A stretch of 64,000 bases of DNA, from the IMG/VR virus record IMGVR_UViG_3300044712_001937, positions 1 through 64,000 of that record; one strand, given 5' to 3'. The notes under the pieces are model-generated. The model did no database searches and was not told where the DNA came from. It saw nothing but the letters and a program-made list of their open reading frames with translations. Both the position numbers and the translations under genes were made by a program. Every line of letters starts with the position of its first letter. Position 1 is the stretch's first letter. Of the stretch, positions 6,136-11,061 are shown piece by piece.

Positions 6136-7233
6136 TTAAAGTTTAAATTTATTTTGCATTTTTGCTTTTTTTCTAAGTTCATTAACTTCTCTCAATGCAT
6201 TTGGGTTATAAATTTCACGTTTCACTATTGACACAAGATGATTAAATTCACTTTCAGTTATTGCTTGTCCTACATACCCCTCATTTTTCAATATATAACT
6301 TTTAGGAGCTGAACTTGATGCTGAAGGATTACCTTCTGAATCAATAGTACTTTCAAATGTCATCTCAAGCAATTCCTGAATTTTTTCAGTAACATTTGCA
6401 GTAATTTTCTGCTTAGTCTTTTTCAATGCCTTTTCAAGCATATCAACTACATTCTCCTGATGATTTCTTTTTACTTCAGCATATGCCATAGTAAAATCTT
6501 TCATTGGTGAACTATGTTTAAGTTCAGAAATTATAGCTAATGAACCATAACAGTCACGAATCATTAAATTCCAAACTTGTTCAGCATATGTGAACGATGG
6601 AAATTTATCAATTGCAACAATTTCTCCTTCAATAAAAACAATCATTCCAATCATTTTCTTAGGACGTTCAAAATGTGCAATAAATTGTTCAAGTTTTTTA
6701 TCATACTTGCTAAAATATACATCTAAATAATTACCAGCAGATGATTGAGTATCTATACCTAATTTATTAATCGCAGGATAAATTCTTGAATATCCGGGTG
6801 CTGTTCCAACAGTATTAAATACCATTTCACGCATAGTTACTGGAAGCATACGGAATTCTTGAGTACCTCTAAAAGTACCACCTTGAGAACCTTGGACACA
6901 TCCAGCATCATTATAAGTAACATTTGCTCCTTTAGCAATATAACCTGCCTTAGTCATACCGTGATTTTGAGCAACTTGCTTTGTCATAACAGCCATTTGT
7001 GTAGGTACAATTACTTCTTTACTTTCTTTATTTTGAAAGTTTATTTGTCCATATGAACTATTACCAGCTACTAATGCTGTTAATGGGTTTGCAAACCGAG
7101 TATCTAATGAATATTCTGAATCTGTTGTTAAACCAACAATTTGCATATTCAATATAGATTGAACTATGATGTTACCATCATTATCCTTGATAGGACGGCA
7201 ACCTTTAAGTAATTCTGTAAATTCTCTTGTCAT
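6136..7233 (-). CDS. ARPP-like (ARG/rhodanese-phosphatase-associated) domain protein
   Basis: 365 aa; motifs KQVAQNHGM, AGCVQGSQGG and GMIVFIEGEIVAID resemble ARPP-family proteins as recalled (no HMM run); starts 12 nt after the vWA gene stop. Confidence 0.5.
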   Translation of the reverse strand: MTREFTELLKGCRPIKDNDGNIIVQSILNMQIVGLTTDSEYSLDTRFANPLTALVAGNSSYGQINFQNKESKEVIVPTQMAVMTKQVAQNHGMTKAGYIAKGANVTYNDAGCVQGSQGGTFRGTQEFRMLPVTMREMVFNTVGTAPGYSRIYPAINKLGIDTQSSAGNYLDVYFSKYDKKLEQFIAHFERPKKMIGMIVFIEGEIVAIDKFPSFTYAEQVWNLMIRDCYGSLAIISELKHSSPMKDFTMAYAEVKRNHQENVVDMLEKALKKTKQKITANVTEKIQELLEMTFESTIDSEGNPSASSSAPKSYILKNEGYVGQAITESEFNHLVSIVKREIYNPNALREVNELRKKAKMQNKFKL

Positions 7234-7245
7234 AGTATATATTTT

Positions 7246-8874
7246 TTAAACGTTTACACTAATTTTTTTTGACCTTTTAACTGGTGCAGCTTCAAGAGCC
7301 AACATTTGAGTTTCAAGCCATCTTTTTGTATCAATTTCAAGCAATCTTGCAGTAATTTGTGGTTGAATTGCACTTGGGTTACTTATTGCCATTGGAACTA
7401 CACTTGTACCTAATTTACGTACATTAGCACCCATTTCTGCACTTGTTATTGGCGAAATCTGAAACATTGGAGTATTTCTACCAGTTTCTGTTTGCCAAAT
7501 CGAAATAACCTCATTAGTTAATCCATCATAAGCATTTTCATAGCCATCAGTTATGATAAAAATAGCATCATAAGGTTTTGACGAATTTTCAACTTTCAAT
7601 AATCCAATAAATGAACTTGCTAAATCAGTTACTTCACCACCAGTTACAACAATATTAGTTAATTCCGCAGATTTACCCAATACTTTTGCTGTAAAATCAG
7701 CAATTGCTTTTGGAGTATTCTTTGATTCAATTTTATCACCTGACATTGAATTACTATCATCAACAATAATTCCAATATTTTTATAATAGAAATTATTGAT
7801 TCTTTTCTTAATAGCAAGTTTATCTATTGCTGAAATTATTTCAGGAGTAAATGATGTTTCATAACCAGTTTTATATAAAGCCAAGAAATCTGTTGCTTTA
7901 TCCATATCAACAGTCTTTTCAACACCCAACTTTGCAGTTGATTTTGTTTGACGGATTTGTTGATTTGTTGATGTAACTTCAACATTCTTTCTGATTAAAG
8001 CTTTAGTTGCTTGTTTTTGAATATCAGTAGACCACATTGAATGATATTGTGGATGTTTAACACTTGAAATTAATCCAAGTAAAACTTCTTCCGGAACATT
8101 TTTAATTCCAGTAATATCAACCTTTGCTTTTAAATATTCACTCAACAATGGAAAATCTAAAGCTGGATAATTTACACCATTATCTTTTTTAAATAAAAAA
8201 AGAAATAATTTAAACGCACGTGAAGCATCACCATTAAAATATTTTAATATATATTCATTAATAATATTACTTTCCTTTTCAGTTGTAACGCCATTTGAAT
8301 ATACAACAAGTTTACGAGCAATTGAAAGCAATATAGATGTTTTCTTTTGACCATATACATGTTTTAAAATTTCAGCAATTTTATTTCGATATTTTAATGA
8401 AAAAAATTCAAGATTTGATTGTCCCCAAATATATCCAAGAATAATTTTTCTTGTCCTTTCATTATTTACTTTAGAATTTTTTAAATCAACAAAAAGACGT
8501 AACACATAAGGTAAACCATTATCTGCAAGATTATCTAATGATGATAATATTGCTTTATCACTTAAACCATTATCATACCAATCAATAGGATTAACAATAT
8601 TACATGCACCTCCCTTTAATGTATTTTTTAATTCATTAAGCAATACTTCAGATATAAATCGACCAGTAGCACCTTTTTGGGTTGCAATAATCAATGGGAG
8701 TTCTTTTGAAAGCATATACATATTCTTAATTTGAGATTGTATTGCTTTCAATTGTTCATCTTTAGAGTGGTAATAAGTAGCACTGCTCTTAGCACCACTT
8801 GCCACTGTCAAACCATCAGTAATTGATTGCTTAACTGTAGACAACATGTTGTTTGTTAATACCAAATTTTTCAT
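7246..8874 (-). CDS. Helical N-terminal region + C-terminal vWA (MIDAS) protein, TROVE/Ro60-like architecture
   Basis: 542 aa; MIDAS-type IIVDDSNSMSG and FIITDGYEN in the C-terminal ~180 aa; the preceding ~350 aa look alpha-helical and Lys/Leu-rich. vWA call is solid; TROVE relationship is inferred. Confidence 0.6.
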   Translation of the reverse strand: MKNLVLTNNMLSTVKQSITDGLTVASGAKSSATYYHSKDEQLKAIQSQIKNMYMLSKELPLIIATQKGATGRFISEVLLNELKNTLKGGACNIVNPIDWYDNGLSDKAILSSLDNLADNGLPYVLRLFVDLKNSKVNNERTRKIILGYIWGQSNLEFFSLKYRNKIAEILKHVYGQKKTSILLSIARKLVVYSNGVTTEKESNIINEYILKYFNGDASRAFKLFLFLFKKDNGVNYPALDFPLLSEYLKAKVDITGIKNVPEEVLLGLISSVKHPQYHSMWSTDIQKQATKALIRKNVEVTSTNQQIRQTKSTAKLGVEKTVDMDKATDFLALYKTGYETSFTPEIISAIDKLAIKKRINNFYYKNIGIIVDDSNSMSGDKIESKNTPKAIADFTAKVLGKSAELTNIVVTGGEVTDLASSFIGLLKVENSSKPYDAIFIITDGYENAYDGLTNEVISIWQTETGRNTPMFQISPITSAEMGANVRKLGTSVVPMAISNPSAIQPQITARLLEIDTKRWLETQMLALEAAPVKRSKKISVNV

Positions 8875-8960
8875 CTTACTAAATTTAAATTTTTGTTACA
8901 GTTATATTTATAAAAAATCAAAAATACATAAATTAATTTAATTAATCACAATAATAAACA

Positions 8961-9010
8961 AAAAAAATGGGCAAGTATTGTATAATTTCTTATACAAATC
9001 CCCGCCCATT
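8961..9010 (-). terminator. Terminator-like hairpin with GAAA tetraloop at the 3' end of the ncRNA cluster
   Basis: Minus strand: AATGGGC-gggga-t-TTGTATAA-gaaa-TTATACAA-tactt-GCCCATT followed by a T run. Confidence 0.6.
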
Positions 9011-9053
9011 AATTTTTGGAAAAATAAATCTTCTCAATAAGAGAAGAAGTTTA

Positions 9054-9119
9054 GTTGTATTTTTACAAGTTTGTGCCACCACTATCGGATGGCAAATTTC
9101 AATTTGCTGTATACACAAC
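9054..9119 (-). ncRNA. Stand-alone copy of the repeated RNA motif (element B)
   Basis: Minus strand: GTTGTGTATACAGCAAA ... TGCCA/TGGCA hairpin ... TGTAAAAATACAAC; terminal 7-bp stem GTTGTGT/ATACAAC. Confidence 0.55.
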
Positions 9120-9322
9120 AAGTTCTTCCATAATGCTTTTTTTTGAAAAACTCCCACACTTCTGTGGCAGAAAACCATTTTTAACCTTCAAATGTTAGAT
9201 GATACTACCCTTTTTATAAGTAAAATTTCTCGTATCAAGAACTGAAAAACACCACAAATTACGGTATTGTGGACAACCACTTCAAACATCCTTTGGATGA
9301 TGATAATATTTCGGGAATATTG

Positions 9323-9440
9323 TAAAAGTATTTTTGTTTTTGTGCAAGTTTAAGAGACTTGTGCCTTAACCACTTGGCTATTTTTCAATTTTGGCTGAAA
9401 AAGTCGGAGTCGAACCAACGAATTTACTGTAAATACTTTA
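9323..9440 (-). ncRNA. Circularly permuted tRNA-Lys(CUU)-like RNA closed by the repeated motif (element D)
   Basis: Minus-strand order: motif strand 1, T arm (GTTGG-TTCGACT-CCGAC), acceptor 3' TTTTTCA-G-CCA, linker AAAT, acceptor 5' TGAAAAA, D arm GCCAAGTGGTTAAGGC, anticodon arm CAAGT-CTCTTAA-ACTTG, motif strand 2. Confidence 0.75.
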
Positions 9441-9557
9441 AGTTTTCCCTTATGCTGTACCTCAAAGTTTGAATTGCTTCAGGGACAATGAGGAATTCCA
9501 TTCACACGGTTACGTTAACTTTCGTTAAGAGGCTTGACCGTGCATCACGTTTATATT

Positions 9558-10187
9558 TTAAAGAACTCTACCAAATGACCAACCAATTGGTATTGTATCA
9601 TTAGTTTTTATTTTTTTATTTTCATTACCGTTTGTAATCCAACGAGTATTATATTGAGAATTATTTTCACCACAGTTTTTACCTTTATGAACTTTCTTCA
9701 TCAACATTATTGTTTCATTAGAATGTTTCTTACCATCCCAATATCCATTCATTCCATTTTTGCTCAAAAATTCTTTTTGACCTATAGATTGCTTTTTGCA
9801 TTGATTATTTCTCCATTCATCGTTATTCATTAATTCAATAAAACGTTTATTACCCTTTTTAGAATTTATGATTTGTTGTTCATGAGAAAATCCTCCAGTA
9901 CCACCAACACGTAAATTAATACATTTAGGGTCTAACAATAGAGAATCATTAACCAATTCATTTTCTCTTAAAGCCAAAGAACTTCGGTCAGAATAATATT
10001 CAAGCACTTCTAATTTAAAATTTTCTTTGCCATATTTATTTATCGACCTTTTCAATCTTTTTCCACTTCCCAAATAATCATCATTTAAATTATTTGTAGA
10101 ATGCATTCCAATATAAAATTCACCTTTTATTAAATTGGTTGTTTTATAAATAAAATGATATTTTTTTAACTCATTTAAATTTGCCAT
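9558..10187 (-). mobile_element. Free-standing GIY-YIG (Seg-like) homing endonuclease
   Basis: HFIYKTTNLIKGEFYIGMHST, YLGSGK, conserved E; NUMOD3-like KKHSNET motif. Confidence 0.85.
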
Positions 10188-10238
10188 ATCAAAACAATAT
10201 TTTGATATAAATACTAAACAAATTCAAAAAAGTCCAAG

Positions 10239-10373
10239 TGGGGAGAATTGGAATCGAACCAATAATCAACTGTTTTCAAGACAATTTGCTTTACCTTTAC
10301 TGAAAACACCATTAGTTTTCTCACTTAAGAGAACATTGAGATAGTATTTTTTGTTTATTTTTGCTATCTCCCC
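10239..10373 (-). ncRNA. tRNA-like RNA with ~60-nt motif-bearing insertion in the D-loop (element E)
   Basis: Acceptor GGGGAGA/TCTCCCC-A, T arm ATTGG-TTCGATT-CCAAT, anticodon arm ATTGT-CTTGAAA-ACAGT; D region interrupted by AAAAAATAC...GTGTTTTCAGTAAA; no encoded CCA. Confidence 0.7.
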
Positions 10374-10400
10374 ATATTTAAAATTTTAAAGAACTTCAAA

Positions 10401-10429
10401 AAATGAAGAGTTTTTAATTCTTCATTTTG
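10401..10429 (-). terminator. Terminator-like hairpin
   Basis: AAAATGAAGA/TCTTCATTTT inverted repeat followed by T on the minus strand; AT-rich, so weak. Confidence 0.4.
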
Positions 10430-10439
10430 TATGTTAAAT

Positions 10440-10542
10440 TTAAGGTGGCGCAGACCTATTATGGCTGTCATTTTCTGTCATTACATCAGAACCACAAATT
10501 ACGGTTGGGTTAACCAGCAACTACATTTCTGCATTTCGTAAT
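10440..10542 (-). ncRNA. Putative structured ncRNA downstream of tRNA-Met (element G)
   Basis: Non-coding and locally GC-richer; stems GATTACG/CGTAATT, GTTG/CAAC and TTCTG/CAGAA; shares an exact 15-mer with 9251..9265. Confidence 0.4.
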
Positions 10543-10555
10543 CTTAAATTTTTCG

Positions 10556-10627
10556 TAGCGGAAGCAGGACTCGAACCTACGACCTTTTGGTTATGAGCCA
10601 AACGAGATGCCGCTTCTCTATTCCGCA
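10556..10627 (-). tRNA. tRNA-Met(CAU), initiator-like
   Basis: Full cloverleaf: TGCGGAA/TTCCGCT-A with a 1:72 mismatch, D stem GAGA/TCTC, TTTGG-CTCATAA-CCAAA, GTAGG-TTCGAGT-CCTGC; CCA not encoded. Confidence 0.92.
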
Positions 10628-10641
10628 ATATATTTTTAATT

Positions 10642-11061
10642 TTAATATCTATTAGAAACACATTCTTTACAATGTCCATTTACACCATTCCATCTTCGAT
10701 TGCATTTATGAAATTCTTCCATTTTTTTCATCTTTTTACATTTTGAACAAAATGAATATCCTTCTTTACATTTAATTCTTTTATGGAAACCTCCGAATCT
10801 TCTTTCAGGTAAATTACATTTCATATGACTAAATGCAATATTATCTAAACTAAAAAACAACTCTTTAGGATTTTCACTATGAAGCCAATTTTCCTTATGT
10901 TCAATACTTAATTCATCAACATTTAAAATTGGCTTTTTACATTTAAAACAAATATTCTCATTCAATTTACATAATAAATGAAATAATATTTGTTTTCTTA
11001 ATTTACCAGATGCAGTACCTAAAGGCATTCCTAATTGTGCATCTTTATCTTTACAACTCAT
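10642..11061 (-). CDS. HNH endonuclease with CxxC zinc knuckles
   Basis: CFKC...SIEHKE...NIAFSHMKCN (HNH-type) plus C-terminal CSKC/CKEC. Confidence 0.7.
   Translation of the reverse strand: MSCKDKDAQLGMPLGTASGKLRKQILFHLLCKLNENICFKCKKPILNVDELSIEHKENWLHSENPKELFFSLDNIAFSHMKCNLPERRFGGFHKRIKCKEGYSFCSKCKKMKKMEEFHKCNRRWNGVNGHCKECVSNRY

What the first reader, a model, noticed from the sequence alone, without database searches (positions are those of the whole stretch)
9323..9440. Circularly permuted tRNA-Lys(CUU) with encoded CCA in a phage
Seen: the 3' half (T arm, acceptor strand TTTTTCA, G73, CCA; 9392-9422) precedes the 5' half (TGAAAAA, D arm, anticodon arm with CTT at 9352-9354; 9345-9387), joined by a 4-nt linker. 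The break is in the variable loop, where the shared motif forms a 10-bp closing stem (TAAAGTATTT/AAATACTTT-A). The D arm GCCAAGTGGTTAAGGC is of the type seen in Tyr/Leu/Gln-like tRNAs, and the acceptor is all A-U except one pair, both atypical for Lys. Established: permuted tRNA genes are known from some algae and archaea (processed at BHB motifs), and YrlA RNAs are permuted tRNA mimics. Inference: this is either a YrlA-like mimic that unusually retains a full anticodon arm and CCA, or a precursor that is circularised or matured into a two-piece tRNA.
Basis: partly seen in the sequence, partly recalled or inferred. Interest (0 to 1): 0.85.

Follow-up and report, generated by a model that had tools for sequence, protein, structure and literature searches.

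The report
Permuted tRNA-like Y RNA beside phage Ro60
The "permuted tRNA-Lys" is real, but it is most likely not a decoding tRNA: it is a conserved tRNA-shaped non-coding RNA, one of several that share a common stem and lie just upstream of a hidden Ro60-like RNA-binding protein gene in a family of giant phages, so it is a new form of bacterial/phage "Y RNA".

Summary
On the minus strand (9449-9313) a T arm, acceptor 3' strand, G, CCA, AAAU, acceptor 5' strand, D arm and anticodon arm (CUU) lie in permuted order, closed by a helix at the variable-loop position. ARAGORN calls the un-permuted sequence tRNA-Lys(CUU). The element recurs in 69 viral contigs (44 distinct copies). All four tRNA stems show compensatory changes (97% paired, 0/500 shuffles).

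It does not behave like a decoder:
- The 7-nt "anticodon" loop is hypervariable.
- U33 is absent in 11/44 copies.
- The discriminator does not follow the anticodon.
- 7/44 copies have a closed acceptor hairpin with no CCA.
- The closing helix plus ACAGUAA is sequence-invariant.

That same helix module also occurs on neighbouring RNAs: a hairpin RNA, and an unpermuted tRNA-like RNA that carries the module in its D region. In related loci it flanks further tRNA-like RNAs.

About 440 nt downstream, always syntenic, is a 542-aa protein with no Pfam hit. Its AlphaFold model (pLDDT 93.5) matches only Ro60/Rsr structures (top 12 hits, E down to 8e-7).

Best reading: a YrlA-like Y RNA of new topology. 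Encoded NCCA (32/44) and U(-1) suggest RNase P cutting into a tethered two-piece tRNA mimic. Protein binding and RNA processing are untested.

The parts
9313..9449 (-). RNA-1: the whole permuted tRNA-like RNA (the finding), from the P0 5' strand to the P0 3' strand
   Evidence: Alignment A1 of 44 homologues and pair counts. Covariance model R1 scores 147 bits here and 120-158 bits in 27 related loci.
9431..9449 (-). 5' strand of the shared 'handle': P0 GGGAA (9449-9445), internal loop AACUU, P1 AAAGUAUUU (9439-9431)
   Evidence: Sequence-invariant across the family. The same module, with compensatory differences, occurs in the paralogous RNAs of the locus.
9424..9430 (-). Invariant single-stranded ACAGUAA following P1
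   Evidence: Invariant columns in A1. Also present after P1 in RNA-0, RNA-2 and, in other loci, RNA-3/4 and the module-flanked tRNA-like RNAs.
9403..9419 (-). T arm (GUUGG UUCGACU CCGAC), preceded by the near-invariant C9420 (position-48 analogue)
   Evidence: 3 of 5 stem pairs covary. The UUCRA loop is invariant.
9381..9402 (-). Acceptor hairpin: 3' strand UUUUUCA (9402-9396), G73 (9395), CCA (9394-9392), AAAU (9391-9388), 5' strand UGAAAAA (9387-9381). The predicted RNase P site lies between 9388 and 9387.
   Evidence: 7/7 pairs covary. NCCA in 32/44 copies and U at -1 in 35/37 open loops. The cleavage itself is inferred, not shown.
9363..9380 (-). U8-A9 and D arm (GCC AAGUGGUUAA GGC) with A14, G15, G18, G19, A21 analogues
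   Evidence: Invariant or near-invariant columns. 2 of 3 stem pairs covary.
9345..9361 (-). Anticodon-like arm: 5-bp stem and 7-nt loop CUCUUAA (CUU at 9354-9352)
   Evidence: 5/5 stem pairs covary. The loop has 21 different sequences in 44 members and U33 in only 33/44.
9313..9344 (-). A-rich connector (9344-9334) and 3' strand of the handle: P1 AAAUACUUU (9333-9325), internal loop, P0 UUCCC (9317-9313)
9041..9130 (-). RNA-2: hairpin-type RNA with the same handle (GAAGAA/UUCUUC; GUUGUGUAU/AUACAAC; ACAGCAA) and a GC-rich distal hairpin. It resembles YrlB-type Y RNAs.
   Evidence: Model R1 hits it through the handle at 29.9 bits, E 7e-5. RNAalifold consensus on 26 homologues has 8 covarying pairs.
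10239..10373 (-). RNA-0: an unpermuted tRNA-like RNA. The acceptor is GGGGAGA/UCUCCCC, anticodon and T arms are present, and the handle is a closed hairpin in place of the D arm.
   Evidence: RNAalifold on 17 homologues gives 32 pairs, 15 with compensatory changes. Rfam's tRNA model gives a partial 27.1-bit match.
9140..9250 (-). Conserved middle block (tentative RNA-M). It may be a degenerate fourth handle hairpin, and it ends in a terminator-like hairpin at 9167-9154.
   Evidence: Conserved blocks in the intergenic alignment and the terminator-like site. The structure was not tested.
8960..9009 (-). Terminator-like GC hairpin plus U8 tract that closes the RNA array before the Ro60-like gene
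   Evidence: Conserved in the intergenic alignment. Sequence seen.
7246..8874 (-). 542-aa Ro60-like protein (helical-repeat ring plus C-terminal vWA domain with a DxSxS...TD MIDAS motif), the presumed partner of the RNAs
   Evidence: No Pfam or PDB sequence hit. ESM Atlas neighbours are TROVE/vWA_Ro60. The AF2 model has pLDDT 93.5. The top 12 Foldseek PDB hits are all Ro60/Rsr, E 8e-7 to 3.5e-3, TM up to 0.52. hhalign to the mycobacteriophage ET08 Ro-like vWA region gives E 2e-4. Synteny with the RNA holds in nearly all loci.

Best explanation
RNA-1 is a non-coding Y RNA of the YrlA kind, a tRNA mimic tethered to a Ro60-type protein, in a topology not described before.

Proposed mechanism, with each step marked:
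1. It is transcribed with the neighbouring tRNA and tRNA-like genes downstream of the DnaB helicase gene (inferred).
2. Its 5' and 3' ends pair into an invariant bipartite helix (P0-internal loop-P1) followed by ACAGUAA. This 'handle' is shared by at least three RNAs of the window's locus and by five or more in relatives (shown).
3. The handle is the binding site of the Ro60-like ring protein encoded about 440 nt downstream (inferred).
4. From the handle, at the position of a tRNA variable arm, projects a complete L-shaped tRNA body with T arm, closed acceptor hairpin, D arm and anticodon arm (secondary structure shown by covariation; L-shape inferred from conserved elbow nucleotides).
5. In most members, including the window's, the acceptor loop reads N73-CCA, then an A-rich spacer, then U(-1), exactly like the junction of two tandem tRNA genes. 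RNase P is therefore expected to cut 5' of the acceptor strand, and 3' trimming would expose a CCA end (inferred).
6. Because the gene is permuted, both halves stay base-paired to the handle. The result is a two-piece, CCA-ended tRNA mimic that remains tethered to Ro60 (inferred).
7. The tRNA body presumably recruits or titrates a tRNA-binding host or phage factor, and the hypervariable anticodon loop tunes which one (inferred).

The element probably arose from a dimeric tRNA: T arm from copy 1, D and anticodon arms from copy 2. This is the origin already proposed for YrlA.
For: Structure and conservation:
- 69 viral contigs and 44 distinct copies. 97.2% of cells paired, 18 pairs with double changes, 0/500 shuffles.
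- tRNA tertiary-interaction nucleotides are invariant or nearly so: U8, A14, G15/C48, G18G19, A21, UUCRA.

Not a decoder:
- 21 different anticodon loops. U33 in only 33/44. G/A/U73 is independent of the anticodon. 7/44 copies have closed acceptor hairpins.

Shared handle:
- Model R1 finds RNA-2 through the handle.
- RNAalifold supports handle-bearing RNA-2, RNA-0 and the module-flanked tRNA-like RNAs, with compensatory differences between paralogues.

Ro60 partner:
- Synteny RNA array -> p542 -> ARPP-1 protein in nearly every locus with enough flank.
- Atlas neighbours are TROVE.
- High-confidence model whose only significant PDB matches are 12 Ro60/Rsr entries, including Thermus phage phiLo Ro60 (an earlier weaker model gave the same result).
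- MIDAS DxSxS/TD is invariant, and there is a weak vWA profile match to a phage Ro protein.

Precedent:
- Y RNAs lie within a few kb upstream of rsr on the same strand, come in sets (YrlA tRNA-like plus YrlB hairpin) and are processed from one precursor. M. smegmatis YrlA is cut by RNase P and receives CCA (PMC4201824).
- YrlA is described as a circularly permuted tRNA of dimeric-tRNA origin (bioRxiv 10.1101/312249).
- Phage Ro60 with two upstream Y-like RNAs (PMC12135203).

Processing signals:
- NCCA in 32/44 copies and U(-1) in 35/37 open loops.
Against: - No expression, end-mapping or binding data exist. These phages are uncultured.
- The Ro60 assignment rests on predicted fold, language-model neighbours and domain layout. 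There is no significant sequence match to TROVE in Pfam, PDB or by hhalign outside the vWA part.
- TM-scores are only 0.4-0.5.
- The handle lacks the GNCGAAN0-1G motif of YrlA, and Rfam's YrlA model does not match.
- Within the RNA-1 family P0/P1 never vary, so helix support comes from complementarity and from paralogue comparison, not from covariation inside the family.
- The handle also flanks tRNA-like RNAs that ARAGORN calls tRNAs, so it could instead be a processing signal.
- One relative (L051/L123) has the RNA but no p542 within the fetched flank.
Confidence: 0.7

Rival explanations
1. A genuine circularly permuted tRNA gene. Its transcript would be matured, either by circularisation and re-opening or as a two-piece molecule held by the closing stem, into a working tRNA-Lys(CUU) used in phage translation.
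For: ARAGORN accepts the un-permuted sequence as tRNA-Lys(ctt). The tRNA core nucleotides are all present and NCCA is encoded in 32/44 copies. CUCUUAA is the commonest loop, in 12/44 copies.
Against: The family has 21 loop variants and non-U33 in 11/44 copies. A34-type anticodons (AUG, AUU) occur. G73 is unchanged whether the loop reads Lys, Asn or His. 7/44 members have closed acceptor hairpins. 9-11 nt single-stranded connectors and a 15-bp invariant helix occupy the variable-loop position. There is no BHB-like motif and no bacterial pathway known to me for circularisation. The acceptor stem has six A-U pairs.
Confidence: 0.06
2. A tRNA decoy or sponge that acts without Ro60. The tRNA-shaped body with its fast-evolving anticodon loop would titrate host tRNA-directed defence nucleases (PrrC, PARIS or colicin-E5-like) or tRNA-modifying enzymes. 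The nearby Ro60-like gene would be merely a neighbour.
For: The anticodon loop is hypervariable on a constant scaffold. The loops mostly imitate Lys, Asn and His type loops (NNUUAA, NNUGAA). U33-G34 is never seen, with 9/9 G34 preceded by A, G or C, as if a UGU recognition motif were avoided or disabled. A second, unpermuted tRNA-like series in the same loci shows the same loop variability.
Against: This does not explain the invariant handle shared with non-tRNA-like hairpin RNAs, nor the strict synteny with p542. It is compatible with the main explanation as the function of the effector domain, rather than a true alternative. No defence nuclease was tested.
Confidence: 0.12
3. The P0/P1/ACAGUAA module is a leader-trailer processing or stabilising duplex for a phage tRNA cluster, for example a nuclease entry site or a protective clamp. 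The module-bearing RNAs would be unusual pre-tRNAs and by-products, not Ro60 ligands.
For: The module flanks bodies that ARAGORN and Rfam score as tRNAs (47-58 bits) in related loci. The array sits among tRNA genes.
Against: In those RNAs the acceptor-like stem is only 4-6 A-U pairs, merges into ACAGUAA and has no discriminator or CCA. The module also closes plain hairpins with no tRNA body, and in RNA-0 it is internal. Sequence invariance on both strands points to specific protein recognition.
Confidence: 0.08
4. Decayed remnants of two tandem tRNA genes (the 3' half of one and the 5' half of the next), or a two-piece tmRNA-like gene.
For: The junction N73-CCA-spacer-U(-1) looks like a tandem tRNA junction. 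Two-piece tmRNA genes are permuted in the same way (my own knowledge).
Against: Strong purifying selection with compensatory changes in 44 distinct copies. There is no G3:U70 and no tag ORF, and ARAGORN finds no tmRNA. A full anticodon arm is present, which tmRNA lacks.
Confidence: 0.02

Closest known systems
YrlA Y RNAs (Rfam RF02553), partners of bacterial and mycobacteriophage Ro60/Rsr
   Same: - Gene order T arm, then closed acceptor stem-loop, then D arm (a circularly permuted tRNA).
- tRNA elbow nucleotides are conserved.
- The 5' and 3' ends form a helix.
- Encoded upstream of, and co-oriented with, a Ro60-type gene.
- Accompanied by a hairpin-type sister RNA.
- M. smegmatis YrlA has a 7-bp acceptor, is cut by RNase P and gains CCA (PMC4201824; bioRxiv 10.1101/312249).
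   Different: - In YrlA the Ro60 helix continues from the anticodon stem and there is no anticodon loop. Here the helix leaves from the variable-loop position and a full 5-bp/7-nt anticodon arm is kept.
- CCA is genome-encoded here in 32/44 copies.
- There is no GNCGAAN0-1G motif.
- RF02553 does not match, although it does find the ET08 YrlA at 37 bits.
- The partner protein is not recognisable as TROVE by sequence.
Deinococcus radiodurans Yrn1
   Same: A Y RNA with a tRNA-like domain that includes a 5-bp anticodon-like arm (PMC4201824).
   Different: Yrn1 is not permuted: its Ro60 helix takes the place of the acceptor stem. That topology resembles the module-flanked tRNA-like RNAs of related loci, not RNA-1.
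Thermus phage phiLo Ro60 with Yrl1/Yrl2 (PMC12135203; PDB 9KOP, 9L5Y)
   Same: A phage-encoded Ro60 with two or more Y-like RNAs immediately upstream. The phiLo protein is among the Foldseek hits of p542.
   Different: The phiLo RNAs were identified by CGAA motifs and a stem-bulge-stem shape. The paper has no occurrence of 'tRNA-like'.
Circularly permuted tRNA genes of Cyanidioschyzon merolae and other algae and archaea
   Same: The 3' half is encoded upstream of the 5' half, joined by a short linker across the acceptor ends.
   Different: Those genes give real decoders via BHB-dependent circular intermediates (my own knowledge). Here there is no BHB, the setting is bacterial-phage, the anticodon loop is unconstrained and the closing helix is invariant.
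Two-piece (permuted) tmRNA of alpha-proteobacteria and cyanobacteria
   Same: A permuted gene in which T arm-acceptor 3' strand-CCA precedes the acceptor 5' strand. The product is a two-piece RNA held together by pairing (my own knowledge).
   Different: There is no G3:U70/A73 alanine identity, no tag reading frame and no pseudoknots. ARAGORN is negative for tmRNA.

Membership tests
Y RNA / YrlA | Encoded within a few kb of, and on the same strand as, a Ro60 (TROVE + vWA) gene | tested here: met
   p542 starts about 440 nt downstream on the same strand and is syntenic across loci. Ro60 likeness is by fold only: the top 12 PDB hits are all Ro60/Rsr, and the Atlas neighbours are TROVE.
Y RNA / YrlA | The 5' and 3' ends pair into a conserved stem (the Ro60-binding module) | tested here: met
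   P0/P1 are complementary and invariant. The same module occurs in paralogous RNAs with compensatory differences.
Y RNA / YrlA | tRNA-like domain in the order T arm, acceptor stem-loop, D arm, with conserved elbow nucleotides | tested here: met
Y RNA / YrlA | GNCGAAN0-1G motif near the 5' end | tested here: not met
   The 5' strand reads GGGAAAAC-KN-AAAGURUUU. CGAA is present in only about half of the members and with different spacing.
Y RNA / YrlA | Match to Rfam RF02553, and the Ro helix continuing from the anticodon stem | tested here: not met
   No RF02553 match at E<=10. The positive control in phage ET08 gave 37.4 bits. Here the helix emerges from the variable-loop position and an anticodon arm is present.
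Y RNA / YrlA | Physical binding to Ro60 and Ro60-dependent stability | not testable with these tools
   Needs EMSA, co-purification or genetics.
Ro60/Rsr protein family (for p542) | HEAT-like helical ring (TROVE) followed by a vWA domain with a MIDAS motif | tested here: met
   The model has helices over residues 8-356 and an alpha/beta domain over 366-530. D372-x-S374-x-S376 and T442-D443 are invariant. Foldseek alignments to Ro60 are full-length.
Ro60/Rsr protein family (for p542) | Significant sequence match to Pfam TROVE (PF05731) | tested here: not met
   No Pfam hit for p542 or for 10 distant relatives. There is no PDB profile hit. hhalign to ET08 Ro covers only the vWA part, E 2e-4, probability 45%.
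Functional (decoding) tRNA, permuted gene | Cloverleaf recognised after un-permutation | tested here: met
   ARAGORN returns tRNA-Lys(ctt).
Functional (decoding) tRNA, permuted gene | Universal U33, and an anticodon loop and identity elements under decoding constraint | tested here: not met
   U33 in 33/44 copies, 21 loop variants, and the discriminator does not follow the anticodon.
Functional (decoding) tRNA, permuted gene | Free acceptor end obtainable in all members | tested here: not met
   7/44 copies have a closed 8-bp hairpin and 5 more have a degenerate CCA.
Functional (decoding) tRNA, permuted gene | BHB motif at the junction of the transcript ends | tested here: not met
   The flanking helix is 5-6 bp, an asymmetric internal loop and 9 bp. 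There are no 3-nt bulges separated by 4 bp.
Two-piece tmRNA | G3:U70 with A73, a tag ORF with resume codon, and pseudoknots | tested here: not met
   Position 3:70 is A-U and the discriminator is G. ARAGORN's tmRNA search is negative.

The most novel reading that the evidence does not exclude
The permutation exists so that a fully processed, CCA-ended tRNA body stays tethered to a Ro60 ring. After RNase P cleavage the two pieces remain joined through the handle. The tethered tRNA would then be aminoacylated, or would be presented as bait to host tRNA-targeting defence nucleases or modification enzymes. The hypervariable anticodon loop would track the specificity of each host's system. On this reading, the array of handle-bearing RNAs forms a programmable Ro60 toolkit for tRNA-centred phage-host conflict.
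Probability: 0.15. Interest if true: 0.85.

Novelty: new variant of a known kind. Interest (0 to 1): 0.62.

Why it matters
Y RNAs that mimic tRNA are known, but their effector partners and their origin remain open questions. This family adds five things:

1. The most complete tRNA mimic among Y RNAs so far. It has all four arms and a genome-encoded N73-CCA, spacer and U(-1) junction. It looks like a preserved intermediate of the proposed origin of YrlA from a dimeric tRNA.
2. A third way of joining a tRNA body to a Ro60 handle, through the variable-loop position. In the same loci there are versions joined at the acceptor end and in the D region.
3. A large clade of Ro60-like proteins, with hundreds of relatives in two metagenome protein searches, that no sequence model recognises.
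4. An array of up to about six handle-sharing RNAs per phage, some with hypervariable anticodon loops. This gives a natural experiment for finding what the tRNA-like domain of Y RNAs binds.
5. A practical warning: tRNA finders call some of these RNAs tRNAs with odd anticodons, including 'SeC/tca' and 'Ile/tat'. That could mislead inferences about phage codon reassignment.

Tried and rejected
- Group I intron or permuted intron-exon idea. It was prompted by the adjacent GIY-YIG gene and the GC-richer flank 9450-9557. There is no Intron_gpI or other Rfam match at E<=10 in 9000-10800. In relatives without the endonuclease, RNA-0 and RNA-1 are 4-5 nt apart, so the endonuclease cassette is an insertion, not part of the RNA.
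- tmRNA: ARAGORN is negative.
- GOLLD, ROOL and other large phage RNAs: no Rfam gathering hits in the window or in 10 related loci.
- Sequence-level proof that p542 is TROVE failed with every method: Pfam, phmmer and profile searches against PDB, hhalign of the shallow profile, and Pfam on 10 distant relatives. Only the deeper profile gave a weak vWA match.
- Nucleotide search of GenBank phages around the element found only homing-endonuclease similarities. A protein search found a single 28%-identical relative in the uncultured phage LR756500.1. Its upstream region has handle-flanked tRNA-like RNAs but no clear permuted copy.
- The MFE z-score of the single sequence is not significant. Single-sequence folding is uninformative at 26% GC.
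- My automatic search for handle closures was noisy. I used it only as a guide to the paralogues, which were then aligned properly.
- Literature searches for a permuted tRNA or Y RNA of this kind in phages found no description.
Full report
**What is in the sequence**

Read on the minus strand, window 9449-9313 contains the following, in order:
- GGGAA (P0), AACUU, AAAGUAUUU (P1)
- ACAGUAAAUUC
- T arm GUUGG-UUCGACU-CCGAC
- acceptor 3' strand UUUUUCA, G, CCA, AAAU, acceptor 5' strand UGAAAAA
- UA, then D arm GCC-AAGUGGUUAA-GGC, then A
- anticodon arm CAAGU-CUCUUAA-ACUUG
- CACAAAAACAA
- AAAUACUUU (P1'), UACAAUA, UUCCC (P0')

ARAGORN finds nothing here in the native order. It calls tRNA-Lys(ctt) once the halves are swapped. 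Rfam's tRNA model aligns only the 5' half (34 bits).

On the window alone the case is moderate. A T-arm plus a perfect 7-bp acceptor hairpin arises 0.13 times per simulated window, and the MFE z-score is -0.99.

**Context**

The window is a 26%-GC piece of a 364.7-kb IMG/VR jumbo-phage contig. It encodes a tail sheath, RecA-like, DnaB-like and FEN-like proteins.

In transcription order on the minus strand the locus reads:
- DnaB-like helicase (13420-11426)
- HNH endonuclease
- tRNA-Met (10627-10555)
- a weak tRNA-like sequence
- a GIY-YIG Seg-like homing endonuclease (10187-9558)
- the element
- about 440 nt without a credible ORF
- a 542-aa ORF (8874-7246)
- a 365-aa ARPP-1-domain ORF

**A conserved family**

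Fetching relatives through the helicase gave 60 loci. A simple scan for 'T arm, 7-bp acceptor hairpin' found the same permuted arrangement in many of them, with different acceptor, T, D and anticodon stems. The flanks were strikingly conserved.

A pattern taken from the 5' flank then retrieved 69 viral contigs, which give 44 distinct copies.

On that alignment the proposed structure is 97.2% paired. 18 of 37 pairs change on both sides: 7/7 in the acceptor, 5/5 in the anticodon stem, 3/5 in the T stem and 2/3 in the D stem. None of 500 column shuffles reaches the observed values, and slid controls give 40-54% pairing.

The nucleotides that build the tRNA elbow are invariant or nearly so: U8, A9, A14, G15 with a C just before the T stem, G18, G19, A21 and the UUCRA loop. 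This is a selected, L-shaped tRNA-like RNA, not debris.

A covariance model built from the alignment scores 120-158 bits in 27 of 54 helicase-linked loci. Many of the remaining loci are cut short.

**Why it is not an ordinary, or permuted, decoding tRNA**

All figures below are unless stated.
- The 7-nt loop has 21 different sequences in 44 copies. They would read as CUU, AUU, AUG, GUU, GUG, UGA, UUA, UUG, CGU and others.
- Position 33 is U in only 33/44 copies.
- The discriminator (G in 18, A in 11, U in 3 of the NCCA forms) goes with the acceptor type, not with the loop.
- Seven members have an 8-bp acceptor hairpin closed by a triloop, with no CCA. Five more have degenerate versions (ACUA, ACAA, UUCA, GCCC).
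- The helix at the variable-loop position and the following ACAGUAA are invariant in sequence on both strands. They are joined to the tRNA body by 9-11 unpaired nucleotides.

**The handle is shared by sister RNAs**

The same 26-nt 5' module (G-R-R-A-R-A-A-C, 4-5 nt, GUGUWU, WCAGUAA) and a matching 3' module recur in the same intergenic region.
- In the window, a hairpin RNA (RNA-2, 9130-9041) carries it. The RNA-1 model detects RNA-2 through the handle alone (29.9 bits, E 7e-5). RNAalifold on 26 homologues gives P0, P1 and a covarying distal hairpin.
- A second RNA (RNA-0, 10373-10239) is an unpermuted tRNA-like molecule. It has a covarying 7-8-bp acceptor stem, anticodon arm and T arm. The handle is a closed hairpin where the D arm should be (15 of 32 pairs compensatory).
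- Related loci hold two further hairpin types.
- Related loci also hold a series that ARAGORN calls tRNA-Asn, Asp, Glu, Ile, Lys, Arg, Cys and 'SeC'. These are in fact tRNA-like bodies flanked by the handle. They have only a short A-U acceptor-like stem, no CCA, and again a variable anticodon loop on a constant body.

Between paralogues the two strands of P0 and P1 differ in a compensatory way: GGGAA/UUCCC, GAAGAA/UUCUUC, AAAAGG/CCUUUU, and AAAGUGUUU/AAAUACUUU, GUUGUGUAU/AUACAAC, UUGUUAUU/AUAACAA. This supplies the helix evidence that the invariant RNA-1 family cannot give by itself.

**The neighbour is a cryptic Ro60**

The 542-aa protein is 65-80% identical across the family. It follows the RNA array in almost every locus with enough flank.

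Sequence searches do not identify it. It has no Pfam, PHROG or PDB sequence match. A profile search against 5.8 billion proteins and a separate one against 1.84 billion cluster representatives each returned 369 relatives; none of the 120 listed from the first carries a Pfam domain.

Structure-based evidence points to Ro60:
- The ESM Atlas placed it among TROVE/vWA_Ro60 clusters.
- A first AlphaFold model (pLDDT 72.5) and a second built on 106 diverse relatives (pLDDT 93.5, pTM 0.91) both show about 350 residues of helical repeats followed by an alpha/beta domain.
- In Foldseek against the PDB, the 12 best hits of either model are exclusively Ro60/Rsr entries: human, Xenopus, D. radiodurans and Thermus phage phiLo. 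Alignments are full-length, E values run from 8e-7 to 3.5e-3, probability is 1.00 and TM reaches 0.52. The next hits are unrelated, at E>0.1.
- The vWA MIDAS residues (DxSxS ... TD) are invariant.
- The deep profile aligns that region with the Ro-like protein of mycobacteriophage ET08 (E 2e-4, probability 45%).

I take the protein to be a divergent Ro60, with roughly 80% confidence. The assignment is by fold, not by sequence.

**Comparison with known Y RNAs**

Chen et al. (PMC4201824) showed the following:
- Bacterial and phage Y RNAs lie within a few kb of rsr on the same strand.
- They come as a tRNA-like YrlA plus a hairpin YrlB, processed from one precursor.
- YrlA has the order T arm, acceptor stem-loop, D arm.
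- M. smegmatis YrlA, which has a 7-bp acceptor, is cut by RNase P and receives CCA in vivo.

The YrlA structure paper (bioRxiv 10.1101/312249) calls YrlAs circularly permuted tRNAs with closed acceptor loops. It notes that they lack a free CCA and an anticodon loop, and it discusses an origin from a dimeric tRNA. Thermus phage phiLo encodes Ro60 with two upstream Y-like RNAs (PMC12135203). Some jumbo phages are known to carry TROVE proteins (PMC7824862).

As a positive control, Rfam's YrlA model finds the ET08 YrlA 190 nt upstream of its Ro-like gene (37 bits). It finds nothing in the present window.

The present RNA therefore works like a YrlA but fails three membership features: the CGAA motif, the covariance model and the topology. 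Here the handle leaves from the variable-loop position, the anticodon arm is intact, and in 32/44 members the acceptor loop reads N73-CCA, an A-rich spacer and U(-1). That is what the junction of two tandem tRNA genes looks like.

**Proposed mechanism**

Shown:
- a conserved L-shaped tRNA body on an invariant handle
- handle-sharing paralogues
- co-oriented synteny with a Ro60-fold protein

Inferred:
- The handle binds that protein.
- The array is co-transcribed with the tRNA genes and cut out by tRNA-processing enzymes. In L005 the end of RNA-0 is 4-5 nt from the start of RNA-1.
- RNase P cuts between 9388 and 9387, and trimming exposes CCA.
- Because of the permutation, both pieces stay attached to the handle and so to the protein.

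What the tRNA body then binds is unknown. Candidates are PNPase-type partners, as in RYPER complexes, tRNA-modifying or repair enzymes, or host tRNA-directed nucleases for which it would be bait. One pattern hints at the last: G34 is never preceded by U33 (9/9), as if the U-G-U motif were being avoided. I did not test this.

**Limits**

- There are no expression or binding data.
- The phages are uncultured. The only GenBank relative of the protein is a 462-kb uncultured phage. Hits in genome collections are MAG contigs, mostly labelled Bacteroidota.
- P0/P1 do not vary within the RNA-1 family.
- One relative lacks the protein within the fetched flank.
- The handle could be a processing signal rather than a protein site.

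**Verdict**

It is of real interest to Y RNA and tRNA-mimicry specialists, because it gives a near-complete tRNA mimic, a new attachment topology, an unrecognised Ro60 clade and a multi-RNA array. It is not a categorically new system.

Noticed in passing
window 9558-10187 (-), with flank 9450-9557; also 10642-11061 (-): A GIY-YIG Seg-like homing endonuclease gene lies between RNA-0 and RNA-1. In relatives without it the two RNAs are only 4-5 nt apart, so it is an insertion of about 785 nt. The same site is occupied in L007, L017 and L099. An HNH endonuclease gene sits between DnaB and tRNA-Met, where relatives carry a handle-flanked tRNA-like RNA.
   Followed up: partly
window 8990-9178 (-): The 62-aa ORF listed here overlaps RNA-2 and the terminator. 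It is probably not a gene. Its partial tblastn 'conservation' in relatives reflects conservation of the RNA.
   Followed up: partly
alignment A1, anticodon-like loop (window 9356-9350): Across 44 copies, G at position 34 is always preceded by A, G or C (9/9). By contrast, 33 of the 35 copies with a non-G at position 34 have U33. The U33-G34-U35 motif, which I recall as the Tgt and colicin-E5 recognition element, is therefore never present.
   Followed up: no
window 6136-7233 (-): A 365-aa ARPP-1 domain protein (Pfam PF20208, E 6e-13) always follows the Ro60-like gene and is equally conserved (65-77% identity). ARPP is a predicted enzyme of ADP-ribose-centred conflict systems (PMC9503650). A functional link to the Ro60/RNA array is possible.
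   Followed up: partly
window 10373-10239 (-) and alignment A5: In RNA-0 the 5' segment GAGAUAG (acceptor 5' strand plus U8-A9-G10) is also complementary to CUAUCUC inside the handle. It covaries with it in L044 and L105. This is a possible alternative fold that competes with the acceptor stem.
   Followed up: no
window 9250-9140 (-): This is a conserved block between RNA-1 and RNA-2 (CCUAACAUUUGA ... GGUUAAGAAUGGUUUU). Upstream of it is a UGUUGGUAU-CAGAG ... AUACCA hairpin that resembles a degenerate handle. The block ends in a terminator-like hairpin at 9167-9154. It is unexplained.
   Followed up: partly
related loci, e.g. L017:12286-12359, L040:11627-11703, L015:11979-12052, L027:7792-7877: ARAGORN labels handle-flanked or handle-containing tRNA-like RNAs as tRNA-SeC(tca), tRNA-Ile(tat), tRNA-Leu(taa), tRNA-Asp(atc) and others. 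These are probably Y-like mimics. Taking them for suppressor or rare tRNAs could mislead calls of codon reassignment in huge phages.
   Followed up: partly
related loci, e.g. L019:7451-7538, L015:12096-12184, L035:8708-8796: Several relatives have an unusually long tRNA-Met (84-90 nt) next to the array. I did not check whether the extra length is a long variable arm, an intron or a handle insertion.
   Followed up: no
L136 (LR756500.1 99955-109346), 900-2460 and 9060-9205: A 462-kb uncultured phage has a 28%-identical Ro60-like protein. It also has tRNA-like sequences upstream of that gene, one of them (2328-2453) enclosed by a handle-like helix with ACAGAAU. This suggests that the link between Ro60 and handle-bearing tRNA-like RNAs predates the family studied here.
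   Followed up: partly
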